Below are positions 17,482 to 62,104 of a stretch of DNA of 64,000 nt, in pieces (position 1 is the stretch's first letter; each line of letters opens with the position of its first letter). This stretch comes from Macrostomum lignano (taxonomy: Eukaryota), in contig NIVC01002897.1 of the NCBI GenBank assembly GCA_002269645.1, positions 1 through 64,000 of the forward strand, written 5' to 3'. The notes beneath the pieces were generated by a model. That model had not been told where the DNA came from. It made no database searches and worked only from the letters and a program-made list of their open reading frames with translations. Position numbers and translations under genes: made by a program.

Positions 17482-17520
<39 letters not shown>

Positions 17521-17567
17521 TAGTGTCTGTCTTAGTGTCTGTCTGTCTGTCTGTCTGTCTGTCTTAG

Positions 17568-17600
<33 letters not shown>

Positions 17601-17619
17601 TAGTGTCTGTCTGTCTGTG

Positions 17620-17650
<31 letters not shown>

Positions 17651-17657
17651 TTGTCTC

Positions 17658-17736
<79 letters not shown>

Positions 17737-17783
17737 TAGTGTCTGTCTTAGTGTCTGTCTGTCTGTCTGTCTGTCTGTCTTAG

Positions 17784-17816
<33 letters not shown>

Positions 17817-17835
17817 TAGTGTCTGTCTGTCTGTG

Positions 17836-17866
<31 letters not shown>

Positions 17867-17873
17867 TTGTCTC

Positions 17874-17904
<31 letters not shown>

Positions 17905-17927
17905 GTCTGTCTGTCTGTCTGTCTGTC
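17481..17927. repeat. (TGTC)n microsatellite, interrupted
   Basis: Long TGTC run with TTAG interruptions and an internal ~220-bp duplication. Confidence 0.95.
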
Positions 17928-18309
17928 TTAATTAACAGAACTGAATGACATCCAGTTACTAATCTAGACAAATATTCACAATTTTTCAGAAGTCCTCGGC
18001 CATAAAGACTGAAGGAAGGAAAAGATAACAGCACTGTAACTTTGGTGGCGAAGTGTGTTGAACAGATAAATATAGAGGCATCAGTATAGTAATAGATACA
18101 ATAATTTAGTTAAGAACAAGAGCACTTGTCCCCTTAAACCCTGACGAAATTGCTATTCGCTTTGGGGAGGGGGGGAGGGGGCCGAGGGAAGCTGCGTGCC
18201 CAGACAGACGGAGCAGTCCACTATGCAGGGCCATACGGCAAAGCACAGGGGGCGCACATAACAAAAAATAATAATTATACTGCTTAGCCAAGGAGACTTG
18301 GAGCTAGAC

Positions 18310-19618: not shown

Positions 19619-19732
<114 letters not shown>

Positions 19733-23952: not shown

Positions 23953-26900
23953 CTACAAAAAGAACATGCTGTCGTCCCTCGAATAAGCAGGCTCAATCTT
24001 TTCGAGTCTTAGCGAGGCCGGATCCGTGGCGGCAGACTGGCGCGAGCTGACACTGCTAGCGTCGGGACTGGAGTCCTCGCCTTGCCAAGTTCGGGCTCTG
24101 AATGCGCACAGGTGAGCGTAGTACACTGGAGAGGGGATGCTCACCTGTAGAGATATGGGAACATGCTATATGTACATGTACACACACTGCATAGTAGAAA
24201 TATTCAGTATTGAAGTCGTCTGACTTTATTGAAAATCTCTTATTACATCGAACAATGTACTGAGGCAATTTCACAACCAGAACCTAGTCACATTCACAAC
24301 ACAACCTAGTCTCATTCACATAAAAAACTAGTCACATTCACAACACAATCCAGTCACATTCACAACACAACCTAGTCTCATTCACATAAAAAATTAGTCA
24401 CATTCACAACACAATCCAGTCACATTCACAACACAACCTAGTCTCATTCACAACTTAGTGACATTCACAACCTAGTCACATTCACAACACAACCTAGCCA
24501 CATTCATATAAAAAACTAGTCACATTAACAACACAACCTAGTCTCATTCACAACCTAGTCACATTAACAACACAACCTAGTCTCATTCACAACCTAGTCA
24601 CATTAACAACACAACCTAGTCTCATTCACAACCTAGTCACATTAACACAACCTAGTCTCATTCACAACCTAGTCACATTAACAACACAACCTAGTCTCAT
24701 TCACAACACAACCTAGTCTCATTCACAACACAACCTAGTCTCATTCACAACCTAGTCTCATTCACAACACAACCTAGTCTCATTCACAACCTAGTCTCAT
24801 TCACAACACAACCTAGTCACATTAACAACACAACCTAGTCTCATTCACAACCTAGTCACATTAACAACACAACCTAGTCTCATTAACAACACAACCTAGT
24901 CACATTAACAACACAACCTAGTCACATTAACAACACAACCTAGTCACATTAACAACACAGCCTAGTCACATTCACAACACTTTCACCGTACACTCACCGA
25001 TCTGGTGCAGCGCATGTACACGTGGCACAGGTAGTAGGTGAACAACTGCAGATCGTCAGAGCTCCACTTATTGTCATCCCACAGCACGTGGTACAGAGAC
25101 GGCTTGGAGGTGCCCTGGATGCCTTCATGGCTAAGCAGATAGAAATTGAACTCCCGTTTGTGCACTATGTCAGTGTCCACCACAGTGCCTGCCGGGCAAT
25201 TGCCGCTCTTGCCAACAGCATCCTGCCTACTAGCTGGGAACAAGCGAGTATGGTGCCGCTTGCCAACTATGATGAAGGTGATTCGAGGCTCGTACTCGTT
25301 GCCGGTCGCCATCTCCGTGCAAGCCTGCTGGATTGCGGCAACCTCGTGTCTGAGGACTTCGGTGAATTGGCCCTCTGAGACGCCGTCTCTGTAGAACATT
25401 ATGCTGGTAGGCTTAAAGCCGTTGCGCTTGTAGAACTTCAATAGCAGAGCTTTGACTGCGCCTTTCATATCGTCTATCACCTCCTTCACAGCGTTGGTCT
25501 CAGTGCCTTTGCGAGACACCTGACAGAGTTGAGAAGAGCGAAGAAGGTTTGCTGCTAGGTTTTGTGAAATTGCTTGTGTCTCCTGTCTCACCCTCATCTA
25601 TCCGTATAAAAGTGGGACTGTCACATTTTTTTGGTGACAGTCGAAATTGTGACACTGCTTGTCACGCTTGTGACAGTGATGTGACAGTCAGTTATTAATG
25701 TGACCGTCGATGTGACACTCAAACAAACTGTCACAGCTGTGACCGTCCATGTGACAGTGAAATATTGTCACCAGTGTGACCGTCGATATGACACTCAAAT
25801 GTGACACTAAAAAAAAACTGTCACTGCTGTGACCGTCCATGTGCCTCGTGTGTTTAGTTGTTTTAAGCAATGGTAAAAAACTAACAATTTGGTAGAGTAA
25901 TATTTCCGATGCATCATTTTTTCTATTAAACGTGGTCTAGTTATTAGCATGTTAATTACGTGCCTCAATTTCTGTGCATAATCATCAAGTCAAATAAGTA
26001 TTTCCACGTGTATTGTTATACACATCTGCAATACAATCCACTCCACTTATCCAGTCAAGCACGTACATGCACAATATTTCAGTAGCAAACTAATAAATCA
26101 ATCATGATCACTGGTTCACTGGCATCCCGCTTGTCTTTAGTCGTCCAACCCATCTCCTCATCCTCATCCTCTTCAATTCAAGCTCGTAATTGCTTGAAAG
26201 TTTTTTCCTACTCAAGTTGAGTCAAGTATAGGTGATGGAGGGTGAGTATACTCGTTCACTAGTTTGCTCATTCGAGTTAGAAATTGTAAATATAAATTTA
26301 ACGAAACACAGCAGATACACAGAAAATAAAGAGATAATACACAAAAATAGCAACTCGAGGAGGAACTTCAATGCGAATCTAGCAATCGAAAAATGTTTTA
26401 GGAAACAATGTTGTACAACTTGGGTTCACATGACAACACATCGACTGTCACACAAGAGACAGTTTTTCGACTGTCACATTTGAGTGTCACATCGACTGTC
26501 ACAGTGGTGACAGTTTCTTAGAGTGTCACATTTGAGTGTCACATCGACTGTCACAGCGGTGACAGTTTCTTAGAGTGTCACATTTGAGTGTCACATCGAC
26601 TGTCACAGCGGTGACAGTTTCTTCGTGTGACATTTGAGTGTCACATTTGAGTGTCACATCGACTGTCACAGTGGTGACAGTTTCTTAGTGTGACATTTGA
26701 GTGTCACATCGACTGTCACAGTGGTGACAGTTTCTTAGTGTGACATTTGAGTGTCACATCGACTGTCACAGTGGTGACAGTTTCTTAGTGTGACATTTGA
26801 GTGTCACATCGACTGTCACAGTGGTGACAGTTTCTTAGTGTGACATTTGAGTGTCACATCGACTGTCACAGCGGTGACAGTTTCTTAGAGTGTCACATTT

Positions 26901-29900
26901 GAGTGTCACATCGACTGTCACAGCGGTGACAGTTTCTTAGTGTGACATTTGAGTGTCACATCGACTGTCACAGTGGTGACAGTTTCTTAGTGTCACATTT
27001 GAGTGTCACATCGACTGTCACAGCGGTGACAGTTTCTTAGTGTCACATTTGAGTGTCACATCGACTGTCACAGTGGTGACAGTTTCTTAGAGTGTCACAT
27101 TTGAGTGTCACATCGACTGTCACAGCGGTGACAGTTTCTTAGTGTCACATTTGAGTGTCACATCGACTGTCACAGTGGTGACAGTTTCTTAGAGTGTCAC
27201 ATTTGAGTGTCACATCGACTGTCACAGCGGTGACAGTTCTTAGAGTGTCACATCGACTGTCACAGCGGTGACAGTTTCTTAGAGTGTCACATTTGAGTGT
27301 CACATCGACTGTCACACTTGTGACAGCTTATTTCACTGTCACATCGACGTTCACATTTGAGTGTCACATCAACGGTCACAGTGGTGACAGTTTATTTGAC
27401 TCACATTTGAGTGTCACAATGAAGGGTCACATGTGATACAGTCATTTGAGTGTCACAAAACTGTCACATAGTCAAAATGTGAGAGTCCCACTTTTATACG
27501 GGTAGTCTCTCCTGTCTTATTCTCATCTAGTCTCTCCTGTCTCACCCTCATCTAGTGTCTAATCTCACAATCATCTAGTCTCTCTAATCTCACTCTCATC
27601 TAGTCTCTCGTGTCTCACTCTCATCTAGTCTCTCCGTCTCACCCTCATCTAGTCTCTCCTGCCTCACTCTAATCTAGTCTCTGCTGTCTCCCCCTTATCT
27701 AGTCTCTCCTGTCTCATCTTCATCTAGTCTCTCCTGTCTCATCTTCATCTAGTCTCTCCTGTCTCACACCCTCCCTTCAAGCTGAATTCCTAACAAAGCA
27801 ACACCGATCCGTCCCCAATGCCTGACCTGCTCCCTAAACTCGGCCGAATATCGAGTAAAATTGACATCCATGGAGGCGACCACAGCAGCAATAGACTTTC
27901 GAATAGAATTGTCGCCAGTTGGCGCAGGGTGGGTGACGTCAGCTCCAAACACAATCATTGGCTCCTTGACGATGGCGCGACCTTCAGCGTTGAGATCTCG
28001 CGCCAGCTGGTCCAGACGCCAATTGATGCCGCCCAGCTTGCCGTTGATCTTCAACAGGATGTTGCCAACTGTCTGCGGAGACGGCGCCCGTGGGCCTTCA
28101 ACATTCTTGGACAGCACCGCCTGAGTAATGATGCCGTACTTGAGATCGCCTAGACTCTTAATAGTCTTATAAGACTCTTTGTCGAACGCGTTCACCACAA
28201 ACATTGCGAACTCAATTTTGTCCTTTTGAAACTCGCGAAACATGCGATCGATCAAGTCGTGATTGGGCCGGCCCTCCTTAACGTACTTGCAGTTGTCCTC
28301 GCGCAGCGGGATGCCGTTCTGGCCCGCTTGCTGCGTCAGCATATTGAAAAACGGCATATCGTTGCGAACCCGATCGTCCAGGTTGACGAAGGCCCATCTT
28401 TGCACCTGGAGAGATCGGCGATGAACTGTAAAAACGACTAAGTTGGTACAGGATTTTAACGCAACCCACCTTGACCTGATCTCGACCCATCATTCCCTGA
28501 TGAAAACGGTACCTAAGCCATTTGAAGCGCTTTATTTTCTGCGACTCTTGAAACGACTCAGGGACTGTAGAGTCGTATTTAAGCCGTGAGTTGCGTCTGA
28601 AGCGCATTTGGGCTGCTTGATTTATATCATTTTGACCCACTTTCAGAACCTTATAGTGTATCTACAATAAAAAAACGCTTTGAGAGTGCTTTCACTTTTG
28701 ATCGACCTTTTGTGGTTCAAACAAGTCCGTATTCCTCACCCTGCATAAGTAGTAGGAAAATGGTACGGTCTGGCCCACGTCGCTGATTGGCTGGCCAATC
28801 AGCGAGGGGGAGCCAATCAGCGAGGGGGGCCAATCAGCGGGGGGAGCCAATCAGCGAGGGGGAGCAAATCAGCGAGGGGGAGCCAATCAGCGAGGGGGAG
28901 CAAATCAGCGAGGGGGAGGCCCCGGAGGTGGGGCGGGGCAGGCCGGAGGTAAAGGTGGGACAAGCCAGAGGCGGGGGCAGGCCGAGGGAGGGGCAGGCCA
29001 AGGGTGGGGTCGGGCAGGCCGGATATAGCTAAAATAGCTAGGCATGTACATGTACGTACACTCTAGCGCGAGAGTCGGACGCCCCTCCAGACTACGGACG
29101 GACAGATTAAACAAGATCCAATCAATTACCTGTCCAGTCTCGAAAAACACGGCATTCCTGGCGTCCCACTTGCCGGGACCCCTGTCCAACTTGACGCTCT
29201 GGTTCTTGGCATAGCCGATAGCCGGACTGCCTAGCACTCGACCCCAGAGTTGCAGCATCCGGACGTCGATGTTGACCTTAAACTCTGCCAAGTAGCGACT
29301 CTTATTTAGTTCGAGCCGCTTGAGCCGATCTTCAATTTCGGCTTTTCGTTGCTCGGCCGGTACGGCCGCTTTGCGAATGATTGCGCTAACAATTTCACCT
29401 TCTTTGTCCGGCGGTTTCTGATAGGGCATCATTGTGCACAGCTCCACAGGTAGAAGGGTGTTTCGGTTGCTAGACACTTTAGCGCAAGGCATGTGCGGAT
29501 ACTGTAGATCTCTACCGTACTGTTTTTTAAAGTACTGCTGCACCGTTAGTGTGGAACCATCGTCCAGAGTAATCGTAGAAGCAGCTGGAGATCGCTTCAG
29601 GTCGAAGATGGTATGCTTGCGGGTGAAGTTGCGACCTTCTTTGGTCTTGTAGTGGCTGGCCTCAACCCGGCACATCTTCACCAGCTTGCCAAGTATGATT
29701 CGATCTTTATCTGACAGCTCTCGATTCCAAACATCATCTCGCCAGCGTTTACTTTTGCCAATTTCGTAGAGCAGATCGGCCAGGTTCTTGCTGGGATAGC
29801 AGGCCACCTGATAGTAAAGCAGGATAGTAGAGTGTAGATGAGGGATAGTAGAGTGTGGGTGAGGGATAGTAGAGTGTAGATGAGGGATAGTAGACTGTAG

Positions 29901-32689
29901 ATGAGGGATAGTAGACTGTAGATGAGGGATAGTAGACTGTAGATGAGGGATGGTAGAATGTAGATGAGGGAGGGATAGTGGGTACAGCCTAGTGGTTAGA
30001 GCATCATACTGAACCCCTAACTACTGAAAGGTCGGGGGGTTCGATTCTCGACCCACTCTCGGAACAGTTTGTGTCCTTGAGCAAGACACTTAACTCTGCA
30101 TTGCTTCAGTTCACCCAGCTGTAAAATGGGTGCCAGCATTAGCTGGGGTAATTGAGGGTGTGTGTGGCGACCCCCCAGTCCTTGGACTGAACAGCCGTAC
30201 GCAGCCTTCAGATGCGTCACGCAATAGCTGCGGCTGAGCTGTCGGTTGCACATCTGCCCATTATGATATTCATCAATTAAAATACAGCAGTATAATACAT
30301 GAGAGATAATATGATAGAAGAAGAGTAGACAGTAGAACAGTTGATTAGAAACAGTGGAGTAGATATCATATCAGTCACTAACTAACCTGGGTATTATCAA
30401 CATTGAGTCGCACAGACCACTGCGGTCTCAGGCTAGCAAACAGGCCCTGATGCATAACCCAGGGCAATTCGCCTTCGCGCTGACCCAACGGCACCGACCG
30501 TTCAAAGAACAGCGCCCTGGAGCCAATGGGCACCATAGACTTTTCAATAAATGTAGCTTTTAAAAGTACATCCACAACTCGGATAGCATCAATGGGTATG
30601 TCGGCGGTGCCCATCTCTGTAGTCAAATAGGTCGAAATGTCGCCAAAATGACGGGTAGGCGTGCGAGATTCGACTACGAGGACCGAATACTCGTTCTCGC
30701 CCTCGCCGCTATCTTTGGGCAAGAGTACCCGCTTTTTGAAAGTGCTTTCGCTGGAGACGCCAGGCAGTTTGTCCAAGAAATAGGCCACCCGTCGGCCGTC
30801 ATAGATGTACCTGAGATTGATTTGGCGTTGTTTAAAAGTATCTTTTAAGTATCTATATCTTTATCACACAAATTCATTAACATTGCCTGGCTATTTCGGG
30901 GCACAGATACTAGAATAACTAGATGGGCCACTCAGCACATTTGCGTGCAAACTACTTTCGGTTCAGTAGTTAAAATAATTTAAACAGAAGTATTTTACTG
31001 TATTTTAAAGCCAAGGCTCAACTATTGGCTTTTAACCCCGCCCTCCCCCAGCTTAAACCCTCCAGCCGCGCCTTTCCACATTCACCCCCTCAGCGGTGGA
31101 CTGGCTAATGTACATTATGGCTGAATCAATTAGCAAGTTGTTTACTCGCCTGCAAGCTTGGGCTTCTAAACTTATCAAAGTCCCCCCGCCCCGCCCAAAT
31201 TTTTATTGCCCTTCTCGGAATTCCAGTCTAAAGCTGCCACGTACATTTCAGTGGACTGGCCAATGTACATTATGGCTGAATCAATTAGCAAGTTGTTTAC
31301 TCGCTTGCAAGCTTGGGCTTCTAAACTTATCAAAGTCCCCCCGCCCCGCCCAAATTTTTATTGCCCTTCTCGGAATTCCAGTCTAAAGCTGCCACGTACA
31401 TTTCAGTGGACTGGCCAATGTACATTATGGCTGAATCAATTAGCAAGTTGTTTACTCGCTTGCAAGCTTGGGCTTCTAAACTTATCAAAGTCCCCCCGCC
31501 CCGCTCAAATTTTTATTGCCTTTCTCGGGATTCCAGTCTAAAGCTGCCACGTACACTTCAGTGGACTGGCCAATGTACATGATGGCTGAACCAATTAGCA
31601 AGTTGTTTACGCCTGCAAGCTTGCACTTCAAAACTTATCAAATTCATTTCAGCCGACCCTTTATTTTTATAAAATAGCTTATGTATTCTTCTTTGCTACT
31701 GAACTGGAAGTAGGAAGCTGTTTTACTAAGTATATATGCCTGAGTGGCCCATCTAGTTTATTTATCAAAGTCAAAGGCCGCGCGCTGTACACCCAGTGTG
31801 AGCATGCGCATGAATGCGTGTCTGCGTACAGTATTGGCTCACCTGTACTGGTTGATCTTCGGGAAGAACTTCCCCATGAAAGCGCGCATCACAGCTTCGC
31901 ACTCTGTTCGTCGCAGTTCAAATGTTTTGCCTTTCTGCCTGACGTTCTGCGTTCTCTTATTGCAGTCTTGTATTTCAAAATCGTACATAAACACGCGCAG
32001 ATCGTCGGAAAACTTGAAATTAAAATGATTAGCATATAGGGCTATTTTTCGACCTTTAGTTCCGCCGCGATCCGGCCTGGACGGCAGCTGCCGGCGACGC
32101 TGATCGCTCACGGCGGACACGGTGACCGGGAGGAACTCCGTGGCTGGTAGTGCCGCCGCGCCTTCAACTGTGCCAGTTGCGCCTTCAACTTCAAGGCTAA
32201 GCTCGGATACTTCGCGTTCGATTTGCGATGTTTCCGCTTCTGGACGACTTGGCGGTGGCTGTTGAGGCTGCTGGCGCCATGCCTGTTGCTTCTTCTGCTG
32301 CTGCGGCTGTTGCTGCCGCTGTTGCTGTTGCGATGGTTGTTGCGGCTGTTGCTGTTGCGGTGGTTGCTGCGGCTGTTGTGGTTGCTGCTGCGGCTGCTGC
32401 TGCGGCTGTTGCTGTTGCGGTGGTTGCTGCCGCTGTTGCGGTTGCTGCTGCGGCTGCTGCTGCTGCGGTGGTTGCTGCTGCGGTGGTTGCTGCGGCTGTT
32501 GCTGCTGCGGTTGCTGCTGCCGCTGTTGCTGTTGCGGTGGTTGCTGCCGCTGTTGCGGTTGCTGCTGCGGCTGCTGCTGCCGCTGTTGCTGCTGCGGTTG
32601 CTGCTGCGGCTGCTGCTGCCGCTGTTGCTGCTGCGGTGGTTGCTGCTGCGGTGGTTGCTGCGGCTGTTGCTGCTGCGGTGGTTGCTGCG

Positions 32690-32729
<40 letters not shown>

Positions 32730-32816
32730 TGGGAAACCAGGAGCTTCCTGCGAAGGGCTGCCCTGATTGCCGCCGCGACCTCGGCCACGTCCGCGAGCTT
32801 TAGATTTAGCCGGCAT
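23953..32816 (-). CDS. AGO: Argonaute (AGO clade, divergent/flatworm-type), 6 coding exons, 1122 aa
   Basis: Exons 32816-31843, 30810-30387, 29807-29130, 28405-27827, 25519-24998, 24144-23953. All are GT-AG with phases 2,0,0,0,0, totalling 3369 nt and open throughout. Domains: N ([11 protein letters not shown]), PAZ ([27 protein letters not shown]), MID ([22 protein letters not shown]), PIWI ([38 protein letters not shown]). Confidence 0.96.
24275..24979. repeat. Compound 16-21-bp minisatellite (CACAACCTAGTCTCATTCACAA)n, Ago intron 5
   Basis: Fills most of the intron. Confidence 0.92.
25601..27502. mobile_element. Non-autonomous Tc1/mariner-type DNA transposon (1.9 kb) in Ago intron 4
   Basis: 29-bp TIRs TCCGTATAAAAGTGGGACTGTCACATTTT / AAAATGTGAGAGTCCCACTTTTATACGGG (2 mismatches). 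TA is duplicated at 25599-25600 and 27503-27504, inside a CATCTAGTC unit of the flanking minisatellite. The interior carries ~50-bp GTCAC/GTGAC-rich arrays and no transposase ORF. Confidence 0.88.
27505..27765. repeat. 25-bp minisatellite (ATCTAGTCTCTCCTGTCTCACCCTC)n
   Basis: About 10 units; one unit is left on the other side of the transposon at ~25576-25600. Confidence 0.9.
28783..28940 (+). repeat. 18-19-bp array of CCAAT-box units plus GC box, Ago intron 3
   Basis: CTGATTGGCTGGCCAATCAG palindrome, then ~7 units (GCCAATCAGCGAGGGGGGA), then GGGGCGGGGC at ~28930. Confidence 0.85.
29820..29975. repeat. 21-bp minisatellite (GAGGGATAGTAGAGTGTAGAT)n, Ago intron 2
   Basis: About 7 units, abutting SINE copy 2. 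Confidence 0.9.
29979..30263 (+). mobile_element. CORE-like SINE copy 2 (antisense in Ago intron 2)
   Basis: Near-identical to 9519-9800 across the B box, CORE-like domain and 3' part. Confidence 0.85.
31095..31645. repeat. 155-bp tandem satellite (~3.5 copies), Ago intron 1
   Basis: GTGGACTGGCCAATGTACAT recurs at ~31096, 31251, 31406 and 31561; units are highly identical. Confidence 0.92.
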
Positions 32817-35254
32817 TTTTTGCCAATAGCATTAACAGAATATTTTTTAGTGTGGAAGGAAAAGAAATAATAGCTACTTGGAACTCTAATAAAACAATGC
32901 AATAGCATTCCATGCTTCGATTTATTGTTTATAGTCTATAATATACTTTCTGCCTCAGAAGGTGAAGGTTCCAATCCAGTTTGTGAGTTGGATATTTGAT
33001 GACAAATAATTTTGTTAATTTTGCCAAAAATGACTGACCACAATTATTAGCAGCAATGACAAAATATAATTATCTAACATTCAAAAAGCTCTACTTTGGT
33101 CAAATTATAAACCTTTCTTTCTGTTAAAATTACTTTTTTAAAAAAACCATAGTCTGGATCATACTTAGTGCATGCTAGAATGCTGTGAATCAATGCACGC
33201 TGACACTAAATAAATGCATGCCAATACCATTTGTAGTTAGGACAATAAAGGACCTTTTTGCAGTTTTTACTATGTGACATTCAATTATATTATAATTAAA
33301 CTAATGATACAACCAATATGTACAATGTCCTACTAACAAACTGTTGATTTCTTTTCAATTATTTACTTTTATTTTACTTAATACTTTCTGAAAAACCACT
33401 CCTCTAATTTAGCCTTTATCATTAAAACTTTTTGTGGCAAATAACTTTGAATGTTCATCTATCATATGCCTTACACTGATATACCATAATGCACATTGCA
33501 TGCCATTTGTGCATTCTCACAACTACACTTTCTTTCAGTTACATGCTGATATTTTCAAATGCATACCAAAAAATAAGAAAAACTATAACTAAAGAGGCCT
33601 AATAAATGTACCTTTTAAATAACTAATTGTTTAGTAAAAAATTAAAATATTATATAATTAAATAATAAATGATATTTAAAACCATAGCCATTGGCATAGA
33701 ATTCTTAAAACCTATTGACTTAAAAATCAATGATATAAATAAAGAAAACTATTTTTTCTACTATTCATCATACTTTTATATATTTATACTATAGCTATGC
33801 TAATACAGATAAAAAACAAAGGAAAATCAAATTAAATAGTTTTATACTCATTCTATTCCATACTTAATCTTACTTACAAAATAACAAACAATCCATTGGG
33901 CCTAAGCTATTTTTTTGTTTAGCTAGCATATGTGAAACTCCTATTGAATATATTTTGAATATTTAATAGGTCTTTAGTTTATACCATGCAAGCCAGCTAG
34001 GCCTATTTAAATTCAAAACACACTGCCTAAATAATTTATATTTTCGTTTCTTATTTCTTCAGTCTCTCTACGAGGAGCGTTGGGTAGATAAAGCAAAGAA
34101 GACCTAGCTCCATGGCATATGCATATGCATTCGGTCGGACACAACTTACCACCTTAAAAGACGAAGCTGGCAACTGATTTAAAACAGCAAAAGCGAAAAC
34201 CGAAAATAAAGATTTTCGCTTTTGAATTCAATTTTTAACTTCTATTTTGTAACCTATAAATGTAAGTGAAATAAAAATTTGCATATTGTAAAGCTTTTTA
34301 ACAGCGTAAGACAAGTATGGTTAAAACTTTTCTTAAAATAGTTCAAAACAAAACTTGTTTAGGCTCCGGTTGAGCTCCCGAACCCAGTCCAATTTCTGGA
34401 CACAAACACCTACGAAACAGCATCGAAGATTTATTTTATACTTACAATTTATTTTATCTGCATTCTCGTGTCAATGCCAAAAATTTTTAAGCCTCGACAG
34501 TGGGCAAAGCCTCGATCAACTGATGGACAATTAATATCAATATCCGGGAGCTGGCATTATGGATGGACACCCTGTTTCGCTGATCAAGCCTGTACAATGA
34601 AACTTGACAATGTCAGAAAACCTCAACTGTTGGACATCCTCAGCTAGTCTCTCTCAAACATTCCATCATCACCCGGACGCCGTCGGCACCTTTCAGCAGA
34701 CGACACCAAGCGCGTACACATGTGTACTACGAACGTATATTACAATAAAAACAAAGGAAAACTAGCGCCATGTATGATAGCTACTACTCATGTACACTCG
34801 ACGACATGTGGACGAAATTGTTTTTGTTCGTATTCTACTCTTTCTTGACTCATGCGGACTTGGGTAATATTTAATTAAATTACACTTCCAAATCTCTCTC
34901 GGGTGTCCATAGTCACACGGTTTCGTCTTTTAAAGGTGTCGCCAACCAGGGTTGTCGGAACCGGGGCATGGGGGAGGCTGGAGCCTCCCTTCCTCAAGCG
35001 ACAAGCCTTCTTTAATTTCCTTTCTTTAGCTCTGCCCGGCCCATCACCGCTTGGTTGTATAGGCCCCGTCACCCTCAATGGGGTATGTAGACACTCGTAG
35101 TTCATGTTGTTCTCAATCTTATTCCACTACACTACAGCTTTTTTCTAATGTGCTTAAGCCTAGTAATATTAGTGTTTAGCACTTTTACTTTGGCGTCTCT
35201 GATACTAATTTCGAGTCTGCCGCAATCCCAAGACTTAAACCGCTGCTGGCGCTG

Positions 35255-36836
35255 TTGTTGTTGTTGTTGTTGTTGTTAGTGCTGAGACGTTTTCCACCTA
35301 GCCCGGTACCAGCCCCAGTACATGTACGCCAGGGCTGCATCCGGATCTTCATTTAGCCAGCTCAATTCGGACGCTCCGTACTGCCGGCGCGTTCTCTCCG
35401 TGGCCGGGCAGGAGCAGATCACGTGTTCAACCGTGTCGGCCTCCTCTCCACAGGCCGGGCAGGTGTCTTTATCGGTCTCCCGATCCTATGGCGATAAGCC
35501 TCCAGCTCCAGCGAATGTCCGGTGCGGAGCCTCCGGAAGCTGACACCTTCCGCCCCGACATTGAGTCCTGGGGTGCCTCGCCATGCCACTTCTCCCGCAC
35601 GTGCGGATCGTGCGCTCGTGCCTCCAGCGTTATAGTAGTCGCGCTCCTCCTCCCTCGCGTGGGCATACAGCCTCCTCCTGACACTGGCCAGCACACCGGC
35701 GCCCTCCTGGGCAAAGGCGGCAGCCGCGCCCGCAGCCTCGTCCGCTGCCTCGTTGCCAGTCAGGCCGCAGTGCACGGGGACGCAGCACAAGGTCACCTTC
35801 CTACTCTGGGCACATATGTCTTCCAAGAGCTGCTGTGCCCTAAGCGCCAGCGGGTTGCGGCCTGTGCCCTTGATGGCCATGAGCCCACTCTGGCTGTCCG
35901 ACACCAAAAGAGCCGATCTCTTCACTGATCATGGGCCTGTAGCCACTCCAGCCCGCGGGTAATCGCCTTGAGCTCCGCTTGCAGCGAAGAGGCCGGCAAG
36001 CCAGCCGGTTCCTTGATGATGATGGGGGCCGCTCTCTGCTCCCGCGGCTCATCTGTCTTCCAGATCACCACTCCGCTGCCTCCTCCCAGCTCCTGCACCG
36101 ATCCGTCAGAGTAGATGGTGACGTCAGGCTTTTGACACGCCTCACTTTTGCGTTCCCCGGCAAGCTGCAGATTCTCCGCATCGCTGGATTTCCTGGTGTC
36201 CGCCTCGCACACCATGATCTTGGCCTTGGCTCGCCAGTCGCTCCAGGGCGCTCTGCTACTGGCGTCGGGAATGCGGCTGATCGTGTCTAAACTGGCGGCC
36301 GCTAGGAAAGCTCCGGCCTTCGCGCGCCATCCCTTCCGAGCCAGGCACTCATTTTAGCGCCGCAGGCACTCATTTTAGCGCCGCAGGCACTCATTTTAGC
36401 GCTGCAGGCACTCATTTTACCACCGCAGGCACTCATTTTAGCGCCGCAGGTACTCATTTTAGCGCCGCAGGTACTCATTTTAGCGCCGCAGGTACTCATT
36501 TTAGCGCCGCAGGTACTCATTTTAGCGCCGCAGGCACTCATTTTAACGCCGCAGGCACTCATTTTAGCGCCGCAGGCACTCATTTTAACGCCGCAGGCAC
36601 TCATTTTAGCGCCGCAGGTACTCATTTTAGCGCCGCAGGCACTCATTTTAGCGCCGCAGGCACTCATTTTAGCGCCGCAGGCACTCATTTTAGCGCCGCA
36701 GGCACTCATTTTAGAGTCTCTGCCTTGGTGCTTCTTCCGCCAACAGCCTCCTGGGGGAGCCGGCGGGAAGCCCGAGCCATCGATCAAGGCGGGCCCCCCA
36801 GTTAGCCCCACACAGGCCACGGAGGTCGACAAGCCC
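35255..36836 (-). mobile_element. 5'-truncated non-LTR retrotransposon (RNase H-containing, I-group-like) with 10-bp TSD
   Basis: RNase H motifs IYSDGS, QAELKAI, VSDSQS, HCGLTGNEAAD; RLRTGH; CPAC-x8-H-x4-C knuckle. TAA stop at 35278-35276 is followed directly by a (CAA)n tail. Perfect TSD GCTGGCGCTG at 35245-35254 and 36837-36846. Several -1 frameshifts and one 0.37-kb minisatellite insertion. Confidence 0.92.
36342..36714. repeat. 21-bp minisatellite (CAGGCACTCATTTTAGCGCCG)n inserted inside the LINE
   Basis: About 18 units; reverse complement of the 37102-37548 array. Confidence 0.95.
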
Positions 36837-36928
36837 GCTGGCGCTGCAATTAAAAATCACTAAAATGCCGTCAGATAAAAAATTAAAGAGACAGCGCCAA
36901 GAGGAACTGAAGGAGGCAGCCAAGAGAT

Positions 36929-37698
36929 AAGTGGCGTAGGCAAGGGGGATAAGGGGATGTATCCCCTGTGGGGTTTTGGGGGTCTGGTGTGGGAGTGAAA
37001 TGAAAATGAAAAAAATTAGCAGGTAAAAAAGAGAAACAAAGTTAACAAATGGTCTAATCCAAAAGATACTGATCTAAAAGAATAGCTATATAATATAGGA
37101 CGGCGCTAAAATGAGTGCCTGCGGCGCTAAAATGAGTACCTGCGGCGCTAAAATGAGTGCCTGCGGCGCTAAAATGAATGCCTGCGGCGCTAAAATGAGT
37201 GCCTGCGGCGCTAAAATGAGTACCTGCGGCGCTAAAATGATTACCTGGGGCGCTAAAATGAGTGCCTGCGGCGCTAAAATGAGTGCCTGCGGCGCTAAAA
37301 TGAGTGCCTGCGGCGCTAAAATGAGTGTCTGCGGCGCTAAAATGAGTGTCTGCGGCGCTAAAATGAATGCCCGCAGCGCTAAAATGAGTGCCCGCAGCGC
37401 TAAAATGAGTGTCTGCGGCGCTAAAATGAATGCCCGCAGCGCTAAAATGAGTGCCTGCGGCGCTAAAATGAGTGCCTGCGGCGCTAAAATGAATGCCCGC
37501 AGCGCTAAAATGAGTGCCTGCGGCGCTAAAATGAATGCCTGCGGCGCCAAAAAACTTTGTAGTACTCATACTTGTAGAACTATTAGGCAGGACAGTGGAT
37601 GGTACTTGTAATTTTTATTGAAGTTACCTTACGCAATACTAATAAGCAGTAGTCTCACCAGTTGTATACCCCCGTGAAAAGTTCTGACTACGCTTCTG
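36929..37698. mobile_element. Degenerate hAT-type MITE (CAGTGGCGTAG-like TIRs) containing a 21-bp array
   Basis: Left AAGTGGCGTAG..GGGGATGTATCCCC, right GTATACCCC..CTACGCTTCTG. Flanks CAAGAGAT / CAGGGTAT match at 5/8. Internal array (GCGGCGCTAAAATGAGTGCCT)n at 37102-37548. Confidence 0.5.
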
Positions 37699-39032: not shown

Positions 39033-39535
39033 GGGACAGAGTGAAAAGGGAGTGACGGGGGGGACAGAGCGACAAGGGAGTGACGCGGGGACAGAGTGAC
39101 AAGGGAGTGACGCGGGGACAGAGTGACAAGGGAGTGACGCGGGGACAGAGTGACAAGGGAGTGACGCGGGGACAGAGTGACAAGGGAGTGACGCGGGGAC
39201 AGAGTGACAAGGGAGTGATACGGGGACAGAGTGACAAGGGAGTGACGCGGGGACAGAGTGACAAGGGAGTGATACGGGGACAGAGTGACAAGGGAGTGAC
39301 GTGGGGACAGAGTGACAAGGGAGTGACGTGGGGACAGAGTGACAAGGGAGTGACGGGGACAGAGTGACAAGGGAGTGACGGGGACAGAGTGACAAGGGAG
39401 TGACGGGGACAGAATGACAAGGGAGTGAGGAGGACAGAGTGACAAGGGAGTGACGGGGACAGAGTGACAAGGGAGTGAGGAGGACAGAGTGACAAGGGAG
39501 TGACGCGGAGACAGAGTGACAAGGGAGTGACGGAA
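39033..39535. repeat. 26-bp minisatellite (GGGGACAGAGTGACAAGGGAGTGACG)n, block 1
   Basis: About 19 units. Confidence 0.95.
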
Positions 39536-40274: not shown

Positions 40275-41258
40275 GGAGTGACGCGGGGACAGAGTGACAA
40301 GGGAGTGACGTGGGGACAGAGTGACAAGGGAGTGACGCGGGGACAGAGTGACAAGGGAGTGACGTGGGGACAGAGTGACAAGGGAGTGACGCGGGGACAG
40401 AGTGACAAGGGAGTGACGCGGGGACAGAGTGACAAGGGAGTGACGTGGGGACAGAGTGACAAGGGAGTGACGCGGGGACAGAGTGACAAGGGAGTGACGT
40501 GGGGACAGAGTGACAAGGGAGTGACGTGGGGACAGAGTGAAAAGGGAGTGACGTGGGGACAGAGTGACAAGGGAGTGACGCGGGGACAGAGTGACAAGGG
40601 AGTGACGCGGGGACAGAGTGACAAGGGAGTGACGCGGGACAGAGTGACAAGGGAGTGACGCGGGACAGAGTGACAAGGGAGTGACGCGGGGACAGAGTGA
40701 CAAGGGAGTGACGTGGGGACAGAGTGACAAGGGAGTGACGCGGGGACAGAGTGACAAGGGAGTGACGTGGGGACAGAGTGACAAGGGAGTGACGCGGGGA
40801 CAGAGTGACAAGGGAGTGACGCGGGGACAGAGTGACAAGGGAGTGACGTGGGGACAGAGTGACAAGGGAGTGACGCGGGACAGAGTGACAAGGGAGTGAC
40901 GTGGGGACAGAGTGACAAGGGAGTGACGTGGGGACAGAGTGAAAAGGGAGTGACGTGGGGACAGAGTGACAAGGGAGTGACGTGGGGACAGAGTGACAAG
41001 GGAGTGACGCGGGGACAGAGTGACAAGGGAGTGACGCGGGGACAGAGTGACAAGGGAGTGACGCGGGGACAGAGTGACAAGGGAGTGACGCGGGGACAGA
41101 GTGACAAGGGAGTGACGCGGGGACAGAGTGACAAGGGAGTGACGGGAAACAGAGTGACAAGGGAGTGACGCGGGGACAGAGTGACAAGGGAGTGACGCGG
41201 GGACAGAGTGACAAGGGAGTGACGGGAAACAGAGTGACAAGGGAGTGACGCGGGGACA
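40275..41258. repeat. 26-bp minisatellite, block 2 (same unit and orientation as block 1)
   Basis: About 38 units, ending ~200 nt from the ERK stop. Confidence 0.95.
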
Positions 41259-41460
41259 GCTTAAAAAGAGATTTTGTTTTTTAGAAAACATTTGAAGGCC
41301 GGTTTTAAGCTTTTAAGGATGGTTTCTGTTCTGATCTCACTCAAGTCGTCCCTAAATCTTCAGTTGAGGCAGAAAAATAAACAAACAAAGCAAAATAAAA
41401 AGACAGAAAGCGACACCGTTTATGCAATTGTAAATATGAGCGGTCTGGTATTGTTGCGCA

Positions 41461-50477
<9,017 letters not shown>

Positions 50478-51614: not shown

Positions 51615-53754
51615 ATGTTCCGCAAGCCTCAACCAGCTGCTAGCTCTGCCCAGAGTGCCAGCTCAAAGCCTACTACTGGATCCATTGCATCTCCCCAGCA
51701 GCAGCAATATAGCTGCGAATTTGGCTCTACCAAATACTATGCCTACTGTGGTTTTGGTGGCATTGTCAGCTGCGGTCTGACCCACACTGCTGTTGTGCCA
51801 CTTGACCTGGTCAAGTGCCGCATGCAGGTTGACCCTGTCAAGTATCCGGGCATTATTCCTGGCTTCAAGGTGACACTGGCTGAGGATGGCATGCGAGGCT
51901 TGGCTAAAGGTTGGGCACCAACTTTTATTGGCTACTCGATGCAGGTAAGCATTCTGTTGGTTTCTTGTTTGGTTGTGGCATGGAATAATTTGACTTTCAG
52001 CACTGCTTAAATCTAGCACCTATTTGATGCAGTACTACTAAATGCAGCACCTCCTAGGTCTAGCAATCCTAGATCTAGCACCCATAGATCTAGCACCCAT
52101 AGATCCAGCACCCATAGATCTAGCACTCATAGATCTAGCACTCATAGATCTAGCACTCATAGATCTAGCACCCATAGATCTAGCACCCATAGATAAAACA
52201 TCCCTAGTTTTAGCACCCCATAGATCTATGCACTTATCTCTATACTTGAAATTTCCCATATTTTCCCAACCTAAATCATCTATCAATCTACATGCACACG
52301 CAACGCTATTACCAATAAATCAGGGCCTCGGGAAATTCGGTTTCTATGAAATCTTCAAAAATGTGTACACCAACCTGATGGGCCCGGAGAATGCCTTCCT
52401 CTATCGAACTTCACTGTACTTGGCCGCCAGCGCCAGCGCCGAGTTCTTCGCCGACATGCTCCTGGCCCCGATGGAAGCCACCAAAGTGCGCATTCAAACC
52501 AAAGCCGGATTTGCTAACAATCTACGCGAAGCCTTCCCCAAGATGCTGGCAGCCGAAGGCGCCATGACATTCTACAAAGGCCTACCGCCTCTATGGGGCC
52601 GCCAGATTCCCTACACTATGATGAAGTTTGCCTGCTTCGAGCGCACAGTGGAAGCACTGTACAAATACGTGGTGCCCAAGCCGAGAGAGCAGTGCAATAA
52701 AGCTGAACAGCTCACTGTAACATTTGTAGCTGGTTACATTGCCGGCGTGTTTTGCGCTATCGTGTCCCACCCGGCTGATACTATGGTGTCCAAGCTCAAT
52801 CAGATGCCGGACGCTGGACTGGTTGGTGTGGCTAAGGCTCTCGGATGGAAAGGTGATGAGTTTCTCTGTTGTTAGCGGGAATTTTCGCAAGTTCGCAAAT
52901 CCCATTGGAATACCGGATTCTCTAAAGGCGCCAGATCTTCTAGGGGCGCCAGATCCTCTAAGAGCGCCAGATCCTCTAGTGGCGCCAGATCCTCTAAAGG
53001 CGCCAGATCCTCTAGGGGTGCTAGATCCTCTAGGGATTCCAGATCCTCTAGTGGGGCCAGATCGTCTAGGGGTGCTAGATCCTCTAGGGGTGCTAGATCC
53101 TCTAGGGGTGCTAGATCCTCTAGGGGTGCTAGATCCTCTAGGGGTGCTAGATCCTCTAGGGGTGCTAGATCCTCTAGGGGTGCTAGATCCTCTAGGGGTG
53201 CTAGATCCTCTAGGGGTGCTAGATCCTCTAGGGATGCCAGATCCCCTAGTGGGGCCAGATCCTCTAGGGGTGCTAGATCCTCTAGGGGTGCTAGATCCTC
53301 TAGGGGTGCTAGATCCTCTAGGGGTGCTAGATCCTCTAGGGGTGCTAGATCCTCTAGGGATGCCAGATCCTCTAGGGGCGCCAGATCCTCTAAGGGCGCC
53401 AGATCCTCTAGGGGCGCCAGATCCTCTAGGGGCGCCAGATCCTCTGGGAGCGCCAGATCCTCTGGGAGCGCCAGATCCTCTGGGAGCGCCAGATCAGGGG
53501 TCGGCGTCATTAATGAGCATAGCTGCATGACTGTAATTAACCCAGCTGTCAACTCACTCCATAATCCCTTCCTCTCACCCCACACAGCCATGTGGAAGGG
53601 CCTGGGCGCTCGCATCATCATGATAGGCACCTTGACGGCTCTGCAGTGGTTCATCTACGACACTGTGAAGGTGGTACTGCAGATGCCGCGACCCCCGCCG
53701 CCAAGCATGCCGGAGAGTCTGCGTAAGAAGCTGGAAGCCAAGCAGAGCGCTTGA
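51615..53754 (+). CDS. SLC25A3: Mitochondrial phosphate carrier (SLC25A3/PiC), 3 exons, ~341 aa
   Basis: Exons 51615-51944 (SCGLTHTAVVPLDLVKCRMQVDP..KGWAPTFIGYSMQ), 52324-52852 (GLGKFGFYE..PMEATKVRIQT..GRQIPYTMMKFACFE..SHPADTMVSKLN) and 53588-53754 (WKGLGARIIMIGTLTALQWFIYD). Phases 0 and 1 match. An in-frame alternative ATG lies at 51600. AATAAA at ~53887. Confidence 0.96.
52071..52222. repeat. 15-bp minisatellite (GATCTAGCACCCATA)n, SLC25A3 intron 1
   Basis: About 9 units. Confidence 0.9.
52921..53495. repeat. 18-bp minisatellite (GATCCTCTAGGGGTGCTA)n, SLC25A3 intron 2
   Basis: About 31 units. Confidence 0.95.
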
Positions 53755-60800: not shown

Positions 60801-61911
60801 TTTGACACCTATTTTAGTGACCCCCCTTTGACACCTATTTTAGTGCCCCTGACACCTGTTTTAGCGACCCCTCCCCCCTTGAAACCTATTTTAGTGACCC
60901 CCTCTGACACCTATTTTAGTGACTCCCCCTCTGAATTCTGTTTTAGTGACCCCCTCTGACACCTAGTGACCTCTATCTGACACCTATTTTGTGACCCCCA
61001 TCTGAAAACTATTTAGTGACCCCCATCTGGACACCTATTTAGTGAACCACTCTGACACCTTTTTAGTGACCCCCTCTGACACCTATTTAGTGACCCCTCT
61101 GACACCTATTTAGTGACCCCCTCTGACACTTATTTTAGTGACTCCCCCTCTGAATTCTGTTTTAGTGACCCCCTCTGACACCTAGTGACCTCCATCTGAC
61201 ACCTATTTTGTGACCTCCATCTGACACCTATTTAGTGACCCCCATCTGAAACCTATTTAGTGATCCCCTCTGACACCTATTTAGTGACCCCCTCTGCCAC
61301 CTATTTAGTGACCCCCTCTGACACCTATTTAGTGACCCCCTCTGCCACCTATTTAGTGACCCCCTCTGACACCTATTTAGTGACCCCCTCTGCCACCTAT
61401 TTAGTGACCCCCTCTGACACCTATTTAGTGACCCCCTCTGACACCTATTTAGTGACCCCCTCTGACACCTATTTAGTGACCTCCTCTAACAGAAATTGAA
61501 TAAACATTTGTTAAACATTGCCGCATTGTCAGGCGGGTGCTCAGAGACACTGAGTTCCTCGGCTACCTGATCCCAGCCTCCGCCATCGTGTTCATCAATC
61601 TCTACGGTCATCATCGGGATCCGAGATATTTTCCCAATCCGTCCGAGTTTAAGCCAAGCAGATTTCTGGACTCGGACGGGCGATACCAGGCCAGCCAATA
61701 CCTGATCCCATTCGGCCTGGGCCGCAGGTCCTGCCTAGGCGAGTCCCTGGCTAAAGCTGAGGTGTTCCTATTGTTTGCCAGCTTGCTGCAAAAGTTCAAT
61801 ATTGAACTGACGGATGAGTGCTTGAAGCTTGGCGAAGACCTGCTGGTTGGTACGGACGGTATTGTGCGGGCGCCGGAGCCGCATCAACTCCGGCTGGTGC
61901 CTAGAGACTAG
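57838..61911 (+). CDS. Cytochrome P450, clan 2-like, 4 exons, 514 aa
   Basis: Exons 57838-58365 (signal anchor, Pro-rich hinge, WKEQRRF..LRDLGLGK), 59372-59776, 60187-60419 (I-helix AGSDTT, K-helix EGMR) and 61533-61911 (PSRF, heme FGLGRRSCLG). Phases 0,0,2; intron 3 has a GC donor. Confidence 0.94.
58590..59345. repeat. 24-bp AAC-rich minisatellite (CAACAACAACAACACCAGCATCTC)n, CYP intron 1
   Basis: Regular units decaying into AAC-rich low complexity up to the acceptor. Confidence 0.93.
59790..60140. repeat. 31-bp minisatellite (GCAGCAGGCACTGAAGGATCTGAGGGGAGGG)n, CYP intron 2
   Basis: About 11 units making up nearly the whole intron. Confidence 0.95.
60560..61485. repeat. 22-25-bp minisatellite (GACACCTATTTTAGTGACCCCCT)n, CYP intron 3
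   Basis: About 38 degenerate units. Confidence 0.93.
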
Positions 61912-62104
61912 AGAGACTTTAGAGTAGCTGTTCTTTTTCAACGGTTAACTTATTAACTACTGCTAGTAGCATCATGACAATGATTTTTTGTTTTTTGTAT
62001 TTTGGATATTCGCCCATTGATTGAAGCGGTATTGTCTCTGATTAAGTGCGTAAATCGGGTCTAACATTGTTTTCAAATAAATTTTAAATAAGAGTCAGTT
62101 GCTT

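What the first reader, a model, noticed from the sequence alone, without database searches (positions are those of the whole stretch)
36342..37548. A minisatellite inserted cleanly into the LINE as an inverted copy of an array 400 bp away
Seen: on the minus strand the LINE reads GAA GCA CCA AGG CAG AGA CT[CTAAAATGAG..AGTGCCT]G GCT CGG AAG GGA TGG CGC. Removing the ~372-bp array restores an open frame, LPAGSPRRLLAEEAPRQRLARKGWRAKAG, continuous with the RNase H ORF, leaving only a 2-bp CT overlap. The array has no precursor in the LINE but is the reverse complement of the 37102-37548 array in the adjacent MITE. Inference: arrays spread by local inverted templated insertion (break repair or template switching), and did so during or after a recent retrotransposition. 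This offers a mechanism for the extreme minisatellite load and the other inverted pairs.
Basis: partly seen in the sequence, partly recalled or inferred. Interest (0 to 1): 0.72.

Follow-up and report, generated by a model that had tools for sequence, protein, structure and literature searches.

The report
Minisatellite copy inserted inside a dead LINE

Summary
Array 1 (36342-36714) and array 2 (37101-37552) have the same 21-bp consensus in opposite orientation, and that unit occurs nowhere else in the window.

Array 1 interrupts a 5'-truncated, minus-strand non-LTR retrotransposon. This element has an RNase H and zinc-knuckle C-terminus, an (ACA)8 tail and a perfect 10-bp target-site duplication (35245-35254 and 36837-36846). 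A profile of 97 related LINE proteins aligns the two LINE pieces, searched separately, to positions 57-95 and 99 onward. The array is therefore a point insertion that cost at most one codon, and it puts a stop codon in every unit.

- **"MITE":** array 2 has no terminal inverted repeats, no duplication and no other copies.
- **"Recent":** the LINE carries two frameshifts.
- **Block copy:** the order of variant units is no more similar between the arrays than in permuted controls, so this is not a fresh block copy.

The likeliest mechanism is a DNA-level copy made after the LINE integrated, joined with 3 bp or less of microhomology, followed by independent array turnover. I favour a template switch and cannot exclude fragment capture.

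The window holds three more inverted minisatellite pairs with 613-696 bp spacers. Two of them flank exons that are still in place. Movement of satellite arrays by such routes is already described, so interest is moderate.

The parts
35245..35254 (.). Left copy of the 10-bp target-site duplication GCTGGCGCTG of the LINE insertion
   Evidence: Exact 10-mer repeat found. It lies directly next to the (TGT)8 tail.
35255..35277 (-). LINE 3' tail, (ACA)n on the minus strand
   Evidence: TRF reports a (TGT)8.3 run at 35253-35277 with 100% matches. It follows the end of the LINE reading frame.
35278..36341 (-). 3' part of a 5'-truncated non-LTR retrotransposon: RNase H domain, the conserved RLRTGHS segment, a CCHC zinc knuckle and the end of the ORF. 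It has two frameshifts, near 35925 and near 35480.
   Evidence: Pfam RNase_H 3.5e-9 and a weak zf-RVT match. Profile positions 99-235, 237-384 and 384-439 are matched in three different frames.
36342..36714 (+). Array 1: 17 full units plus one 16-bp partial unit of CAGGCACTCATTTTAGCGCCG, interrupting the LINE ORF. It places a stop codon in the LINE frame in every unit.
36715..36836 (-). 5' remnant of the same LINE (122 bp, the region after the RT domain, GLVDLRG...PRQRL)
   Evidence: Searched on its own, it aligns to profile positions 57-95 and ends exactly at the array edge. P0002 aligns across the junction. 90 of 148 BLASTP alignments run across it without a break.
36837..36846 (.). Right copy of the 10-bp target-site duplication GCTGGCGCTG
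   Evidence: It coincides with the end of LINE homology and with the fall in GC content.
36847..37100 (.). Unique AT-rich host DNA between the LINE insertion and array 2
   Evidence: No other copy in the window. No degenerate units above background.
37101..37552 (-). Array 2: 21.5 units of the same 21-bp unit in the opposite orientation. It is more variable, with private variants A2G, C7T and G4A, mostly in its outer half.

Best explanation
**Proposed sequence of events**
1. A non-LTR retrotransposon (endonuclease, reverse transcriptase and RNase H type) inserted on the minus strand as a 5'-truncated copy of about 1.2 kb. The insertion point was about 255 bp from an existing 21-bp minisatellite (array 2).
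2. Later, at the DNA level, a copy of that minisatellite was placed at one point inside the dead LINE, 122 bp from its 5' end, in inverted orientation. No LINE sequence was lost, and the joins show only 2-3 bp of overlap.
3. I think the most likely route is a template switch during replication or repair. A 3' end at a stalled fork or break in the LINE used the opposite strand of the neighbouring array a few hundred bp away as template, then returned. This is the FoSTeS/MMBIR type, or synthesis-dependent strand annealing with a template switch.
4. At least two unit types were transferred. Both arrays then changed independently through slippage and unequal exchange, which erased any common order of variants.

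**Shown:** the point insertion, the inverted relationship to the neighbour, the boundaries of the LINE insertion, and the lack of a shared variant order.

**Inferred:** the direction of copying, its timing after integration, and the molecular route.
For: - **Point insertion.** Separate searches of the two LINE pieces hit adjacent profile positions, 57-95 and 99 onward. P0002 and 90 of 148 homologues align across the join.
- **Not part of a working LINE.** The array carries a stop in the LINE frame in every unit, so it cannot belong to an autonomous LINE.
- **LINE delimited independently.** A perfect 10-bp target-site duplication and an (ACA)8 tail mark its ends.
- **Only relative is the neighbour.** The unit's only other occurrence in the window is the inverted array 386 bp away.
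- **Joins.** A 2-bp AG duplication, with CAG shared at the left join.
- **Shared non-CpG variant.** C5T occurs in both arrays.
- **Array 2 looks older.** It differs from the consensus at 21 of 441 positions, against 10 of 357 for array 1.
- **A cis process with a length scale.** Three other inverted minisatellite pairs have 613-696 bp spacers, two with exons still in place. Five pairs are inverted and one is direct.
- **Precedent.** Microhomology-mediated movement of satellite arrays, with FoSTeS/MMBIR named as a candidate route, is described in PMC7403614.
Against: - No register of the two arrays preserves the order of variants, so the donor-copy relationship cannot be read off directly.
- Overlaps of 2-3 bp are close to what chance gives.
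- The flanking 2-bp duplication fits fill-in of a staggered break plus ligation of a free fragment just as well.
- The single-stranded array is not unusually structured (z = 0.67 and -2.35). There is therefore no direct reason to expect fork stalling.
- No other copy of this LINE family, no sequencing reads and no empty-site allele could be obtained.
- The excess of inverted pairs (5 against 1) is not significant. It could also reflect loss of direct pairs through deletion.
Confidence: 0.45

Rival explanations
1. Capture of a free fragment. A linear or circular piece excised from array 2, or from another array of the same unit, was ligated by end joining into a staggered double-strand break in the LINE. 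Orientation was a matter of chance.
For: - A 2-bp duplication (AG) flanks the insert, as expected from fill-in of a 2-nt overhang.
- Both joins are sharp, with 3 bp or less of homology.
- Circular DNA from satellites and its re-insertion are proposed for Drosophila satellites (PMC7403614).
Against: - The insert is 17.7 units rather than a whole number. End trimming could account for this.
- Capture does not predict the very short donor-to-target distance. It also does not predict the recurrent 386-696 bp spacing or the mostly inverted orientation of neighbouring pairs.
Confidence: 0.25
2. The array was already in the source LINE transcript (a non-autonomous, array-bearing subfamily). Array 2 would then be the later local copy, or the proximity is a coincidence.
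For: - Copying direction cannot be read from the arrays.
- Array 2 also has sharp edges with no proto-unit in its flanks.
- Dead LINE copies can be mobilised in trans (established knowledge).
Against: - A stop in every unit rules out an autonomous master copy.
- Homologues show no insertion at this position.
- Array 2 is longer and more diverse.
- A local inverted copying event is still needed to explain array 2.
Confidence: 0.1
3. The array is, or rides in, a mobile DNA element (a MITE, a foldback element, or a Helitron or Helentron carrying satellites) that inserted at both sites by local hopping.
For: - Long inverted arrays around a spacer look like a foldback element.
- Satellite-like arrays carried by Helentrons are known in oyster (PMC7492417, listed).
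- Array units in the window share sequence modules.
Against: - There are no terminal inverted repeats or flanking repeats around array 2.
- The flanks have no further copies.
- Array 1 has no non-repeat termini and only a 2-bp duplication.
- Its ends are not the 5'-TC...CTRR-3' of a Helitron inserted at A|T.
- The spacer is host DNA: the LINE 5' end, its target-site duplication and unique flank. In two other pairs the spacer is an exon still in place.
Confidence: 0.08
4. Reverse-transcriptase template switching during target-primed reverse transcription copied an array transcript or nearby DNA into the growing cDNA.
For: LINE reverse transcriptases do jump templates (established knowledge). 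The array lies only 122 bp from the 5' junction.
Against: The enzyme would have to return to the next nucleotide of the LINE RNA after 372 nt. Known chimeras arise at the 5' end of the RNA and do not return.
Confidence: 0.05
5. Assembly artefact: a chimeric or fold-back read produced a false inverted duplicate.
For: The window is 34% tandem arrays, which is hard to assemble. No reads were available.
Against: - The arrays differ by private variants and in length, so neither is a mirror image of the other.
- The joins fall at one LINE codon and leave the frame intact. A fold-back chimera would not do this.
Confidence: 0.03

Closest known systems
Movement of satellite arrays to new euchromatic sites by microhomology-mediated repair, circular DNA or FoSTeS/MMBIR (Rsp-like into 1.688 in Drosophila simulans and D. 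mauritiana; PMC7403614)
   Same: A block of tandem repeats appears at a site that did not have it. The joins are sharp and show a few bp of overlap. The arrays expand and turn over afterwards.
   Different: - There the target is another satellite with shared homology, and spread covers megabases. Here the target is a unique LINE sequence and the donor lies 386 bp away in inverted orientation.
- The unit here is 21 bp, a minisatellite rather than a satellite of more than 100 bp.
Template-switch mutations and locally templated insertions (intra-fork strand switch; polymerase-theta end joining; FoSTeS/MMBIR) - from my own knowledge of that literature
   Same: The donor lies within a few hundred bp. 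The inverted orientation arises from copying the opposite strand. The process returns to the original position with little or no loss, and the joins show microhomology.
   Different: - Described events are mostly tens of bp and match their donor exactly.
- Here the insert is now 372 bp and no longer collinear with the donor. A short seed followed by expansion has to be assumed.
Foldback (FB-type) transposons with long terminal inverted arrays of tandem repeats - from my own knowledge
   Same: Two arrays of short tandem repeats lie in inverted orientation around a spacer of a few hundred bp.
   Different: The spacer is host DNA, not the interior of an element. The outer edges have no target-site duplication. 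The left array lies inside a LINE that continues on its inner side.
Satellite-like arrays carried by non-autonomous Helentrons or MITEs in bivalves (PMC7492417, listed)
   Same: Many short dispersed arrays lie in gene-rich DNA.
   Different: No conserved element flanks or termini were found here.

Membership tests
Non-LTR (LINE) retrotransposon with APE endonuclease, RT and RNase H | RNase H domain and C-terminal zinc knuckle homologous to LINE ORF2 | tested here: met
   Pfam RNase_H 3.5e-9. Profile of 97 homologues, E = 2e-24 to 3e-14 for the pieces. Full-length homologues carry Exo_endo_phos, RVT_1 and RNase_H.
Non-LTR (LINE) retrotransposon with APE endonuclease, RT and RNase H | Hallmarks of target-primed insertion: complete 3' end with a simple-repeat tail, 5' truncation and a target-site duplication | tested here: met
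   (ACA)8 tail and a 10-bp duplication exactly at both independently estimated ends.
Non-LTR (LINE) retrotransposon with APE endonuclease, RT and RNase H | Reverse transcriptase and endonuclease domains in this copy | tested here: not met
   The copy starts at profile position 57, after the RT domain. It is a truncated, dead copy, as is usual for LINE insertions.
   The best inverted local alignment of the flanks scores below the shuffled mean (P = 0.86). Only AT-rich 9-10-mers were found.
   No direct repeat beyond chance (P = 0.18). The flanks have no second copy in the 64 kb. Genome-wide copy number could not be tested.
Foldback transposon | Inverted terminal arrays that enclose element-specific DNA and are bounded by a target-site duplication | tested here: not met
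   The inverted arrays are present. However, the spacer consists of the LINE 5' end, the LINE's target-site duplication and unique host DNA. The outer flanks are unrelated.
Locally templated (template-switch) insertion | Donor sequence nearby, in this case on the opposite strand | tested here: met
   The only other occurrence of the unit is 386 bp away and inverted.
Locally templated (template-switch) insertion | Insert collinear with a stretch of the donor | tested here: not met
   No register beats permuted unit order (0.948 against 0.949, P = 0.59). This is compatible only with an old event or with a short seed plus expansion.
Locally templated (template-switch) insertion | Microhomology at the switch points | tested here: inconclusive
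   CAG at one join, and a 2-bp AG duplication. This is too short to tell apart from chance.
Re-inserted circular DNA from a tandem array | Insert is a whole number of units, with the same phase at both ends | tested here: inconclusive
   The insert is 17 units plus 16 bp, with 5 bp missing. End trimming could explain this.
Helitron or Helentron carrying satellites | 5'-TC...CTRR-3' ends, insertion between A and T, and a 3' hairpin | tested here: not met
   The ends of array 1 are CAGGCAC...TTTTAG, between GAGC and AGTC.

The most novel reading that the evidence does not exclude
This genome may have a dedicated, polar process that seeds minisatellite arrays as inverted pairs about 0.4-0.7 kb apart, on either side of untouched host DNA such as exons or a LINE fragment.
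- One possible form is synthesis primed from two nicks on opposite strands using one small repeat template. Another is a protein that recognises shared core modules such as GCGCTAAAAT and CAGGCACTCA.
- In the three pairs whose units can be compared (36342/37101, 52046/52930 and 60581/62105), the same strand (CTAAAAT...GTG) reads outward from the spacer.
- Unit consensuses across the window share 8-9-mers five to ten times more often than shuffled controls.
Probability: 0.1. Interest if true: 0.8.

Novelty: new member of a known kind. Interest (0 to 1): 0.42.

Why it matters
Tandem arrays rarely show how they reached a new site, because the empty site is usually unknown. Here the interrupted LINE reading frame supplies the empty site to the base. 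It shows that a minisatellite can be placed at a site with no homology, without loss of target DNA, next to its only relative.

If the pattern of inverted pairs at 0.4-0.7 kb holds genome-wide, it would give a testable route to the very high minisatellite load (34% of this window). It would also be relevant to genes, since arrays flank exons within about 35-200 bp.

As a single locus it remains an example of processes already proposed for satellite DNA.

Tried and rejected
1. **Other copies of the LINE or of the array flanks in the window:** none found.
2. **Close relatives of the LINE in the protein collection:** the word-indexed search gave only four hits, at 28-38% identity. The exhaustive search gave thousands of homologues, but the closest is 36% identical. 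The family consensus for this genome could therefore not be obtained.
3. **The same locus in another assembly, using the neighbouring Argonaute exon:** no hit.
4. **The 21-bp unit in metagenome and prokaryote genome collections:** no match.
5. **The predicted empty-site 21-mer in metagenomes:** one hit (L002). It is a bare 21-mer in an unrelated contig with no similarity on either side, so it is a chance match.
6. **The contig of P0002:** another truncated LINE fragment in a eukaryotic contig. It adds no information about the array.
7. **Degenerate units in the flanks:** none above background. The CTAAAATG and GTACTCAT 8-mers I noticed by eye are not significant.
8. **Inversion with one breakpoint inside a single ancestral array:** rejected, because undoing it would break the LINE continuity shown. 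In the other pairs it would also invert exons that are in the correct orientation.
9. **Fork stalling due to array hairpins:** not supported.
10. **Rfam scan of the window:** no RNA family found.
11. **Literature search to identify the organism by its minisatellite load:** inconclusive.

Full report
**What is there**

Tandem Repeats Finder reports a 21-bp array at 36342-36714 (17.8 copies of CAGGCACTCATTTTAGCGCCG, 96% matches). It reports a second array at 37101-37552 (21.5 copies of the reverse complement, 92% matches). The arms are 92-94% complementary over up to 373 nt, with 386 bp between them. A search for the unit with up to three mismatches gives 39 hits, all inside these two arrays, against none expected from shuffles. 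The basic observation is therefore correct and far beyond chance.

**The interrupted element is a LINE, and its limits can be fixed**

A block of 60-69% GC at about 35300-36840 stands out from a background of about 30% GC. On the minus strand it encodes an RNase H domain (Pfam 3.5e-9) and a weak zinc-knuckle match.

The distant homologue P0002 (33% identity) led to more than 10,000 relatives in the exhaustive protein search. Full-length members carry an AP-type endonuclease, a reverse transcriptase and RNase H. This is a non-LTR retrotransposon of the RNase H-bearing kind.

The ORF ends about 20 bp before an (ACA)8 run (TGT on the plus strand, 35253-35277). An exact 10-mer, GCTGGCGCTG, lies immediately outside that tail (35245-35254). 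It occurs again at 36837-36846, exactly where LINE homology and high GC stop. Across the whole search space one such 10-mer is not rare, about 0.16 expected. Its position within a few bp of two independently estimated ends makes it a convincing target-site duplication.

The insertion is therefore 35255-36836. It is a 5'-truncated copy of about 1.2 kb plus the 373-bp array. Array 1 lies 122 bp from the LINE's 5' end, and array 2 begins 255 bp beyond the right-hand duplication.

**The array is a clean point insertion**

Frame restoration alone has a one-in-three chance, so I tested continuity without joining anything.

I built a 445-position profile from 97 homologues and searched it against the separate pieces. 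The piece upstream of the array aligns to positions 57-95 and ends at the array edge (E = 2e-4 in this small search). The downstream piece starts at position 99 (E = 2e-24). Only about one residue of the profile is unaccounted for.

P0002 aligns straight across the join (PRQRLAR-KGW against PRCRLKHERGW). So do 90 of 148 pairwise alignments. In the LINE frame the array has a stop codon in every unit, so it cannot belong to a working element. No resemblance to the unit exists in the LINE flanks beyond a shared CAG.

On the plus strand the joins read GAGC|CAGGCAC... and ...TTTTAG|AGTCTC, against an inferred original GAGCCAGTCTC. That amounts to a 2-bp AG duplication, or equivalently 2-3 bp of overlap.

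**What does not hold**

- **'MITE'.** The flanks of array 2 show no inverted or direct repeat beyond chance (P = 0.86 and 0.18). They have no second copy in the window.
- **'Recent'.** The LINE changes frame twice, at profile positions 235/237 (near 35925) and 384 (near 35480), and has a stop at the first shift. The target-site duplication and tail are nevertheless perfect.
The arrays share the consensus unit, the non-CpG variant C5T and the CpG variant C20T. No register gives more identity than permuted unit order (0.948 against 0.949, P = 0.59).
  - Array 1 has private G16A and G16C/G18A variants.
  - Array 2 has private A2G, C7T and G4A variants, mostly in its outer half.
  - A fresh 372-bp block copy is thus excluded. 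Either the copy is old and both arrays have turned over, or a short seed of at least two unit types was copied and then expanded in place. The run of four C5T units in array 1 fits local expansion.

**Mechanism**

Several alternatives can be set aside on the evidence above.

- An inversion that split one ancestral array is ruled out, because undoing it would destroy the LINE continuity shown.
- A foldback transposon is ruled out, because the 'loop' consists of the LINE's own 5' end, its target-site duplication and unique host DNA.
- Template jumping by reverse transcriptase would need a return to the very next nucleotide after 372 nt.
- An assembly chimera would not produce two arrays with different private variants, nor joins that fall at one LINE codon.

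What remains is a DNA-level, homology-independent insertion of a copy of the neighbouring array, or the reverse direction. It could arise in either of two ways:

- a template switch onto the opposite strand during replication or repair; or
- end-joining capture of an excised fragment.

I favour the template switch for three reasons. The donor is only 386 bp away. Neighbouring same-unit pairs in this window are mostly inverted. Their spacers fall in a narrow range. The 2-bp duplication fits capture at a staggered break equally well, so this preference is moderate. The single-stranded array is not unusually structured (z = 0.67 and -2.35), so I have no direct support for fork stalling.

**The wider pattern in the window**

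Thirty-six arrays cover 34% of the 64 kb. Same-unit arrays are neighbours, never distant. The pairs are listed below.

| Pair | Orientation | Gap (bp) | Identity |
|---|---|---|---|
| 25699-25799 / 26437-27418 | inverted | 637 | 70.5% |
| 36342-36714 / 37101-37552 | inverted | 386 | 93% |
| 52046-52233 / 52930-53495 | inverted | 696 | 71% |
| 60581-61491 / 62105-62471 | inverted | 613 | 77.5% |
| (TCTG)n 17482-17928 / (AGAC)n 19620-19732 (microsatellites) | inverted | 1691 | 88% |
| 39033-39532 / 40275-41259 | direct | 742 | 92% |

In two inverted pairs the spacer is an exon in its proper orientation. One is a mitochondrial-carrier exon at 52342-52875. The other is the last cytochrome P450 exon at 61531-61911.

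As in the LINE case, the arrays sit at two separate points on either side of unrearranged host DNA. Five inverted against one direct is not significant, however, and direct pairs may be lost preferentially through deletion.

**Comparison with what is known**

Movement of satellite arrays to new sites with microhomology at the joins has been described for Drosophila X-linked satellites. Circular DNA and FoSTeS/MMBIR are discussed there as routes (PMC7403614). Short, locally templated inverted insertions are also well known (my own knowledge).

This case is a member of that class. Its useful particular feature is that the empty site can be inferred to the base from a protein-coding frame. The donor is a minisatellite a few hundred bp away. 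It is not a member of the MITE, foldback or Helitron families, whose defining features were tested and not met.

**Limits**

No other copy of this LINE family, no reads and no second assembly of this organism could be reached with the collections available. The direction of copying, the timing relative to LINE integration and the molecular route are therefore inferences.

Noticed in passing
window 1-64000: 36 tandem arrays, mostly with 12-35 bp units, cover 34% of a gene-dense metazoan window. The genes include a kinesin-like gene, a KH/SAM protein, an Argonaute, an ERK-type kinase, a mitochondrial carrier and a P450. Arrays lie mostly in introns, some within about 35 bp of splice sites.
   Followed up: partly
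window 52046-53495 and 60581-62471: Two inverted same-unit array pairs flank exons that are still in place: a Mito_carr exon at 52342-52875 and the last P450 exon at 61531-61911. The left array of the second pair ends about 35 bp before the exon's acceptor site.
   Followed up: partly
window, unit consensuses of arrays at 19952, 21053, 36342, 52046, 53996, 59784, 63703 and others: Otherwise unrelated units share roughly 10-bp modules: TTTTAGCGCC (arrays 19952, 36342, 63703), CAGGCACTCA (36342, 53996, 59784) and GCACTCAT (36342, 52046). With 8-mers, 24 pairs of arrays share a word against 4.8 in shuffles. With 9-mers, 12 pairs do against 1.2 (P < 0.002). Units look like mosaics of common pieces.
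   Followed up: partly
window 37353-37520: In the outer half of array 2 a variant CTGCGG to CCGCAG recurs every third unit, forming a 63-bp higher-order repeat. The change equals the exact reverse complement of the hexamer, so it is either a 6-bp micro-inversion or two symmetrical transitions.
   Followed up: no
window 36342-37552, 52046-53495 and 60581-62471: In the three inverted pairs whose units are comparable, the same strand (CTAAAAT..GTG) reads outward from the spacer. Three out of three is only P = 0.25, but it would be worth a genome-wide count.
   Followed up: no
window 24983-32816 (minus strand): A divergent Argonaute gene has a clear Piwi domain (2.3e-57), but its PAZ-region exon found no relative in the word-indexed search. 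Its N-terminus is a Q/P-rich stretch of roughly 160-170 residues encoded by the CTG-type array at 32283-32726. The LINE and array locus lies about 2.4 kb upstream of its first exon.
   Followed up: partly
window 9559-9799, 30026-30263 and 46999-47098: A short dispersed repeat of about 240 bp (94.6% identity between two copies, plus a third partial copy) is the only non-tandem repeat family in the window. It may be a SINE or MITE and is unrelated to the arrays studied.
   Followed up: no
window 41744-43147 (minus strand): An ERK-type kinase exon abuts the 21-bp array at 41755-42753 so closely that one open frame runs from the exon through the whole array. Gene predictors are likely to mis-call this.
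   Followed up: no
L002 3852-3872: The predicted empty-site 21-mer has one exact match in a JGI metagenome contig (Ga0164315_10007148), with no similarity on either side. It is a reminder that single 21-mer hits in collections of this size occur by chance.
   Followed up: yes
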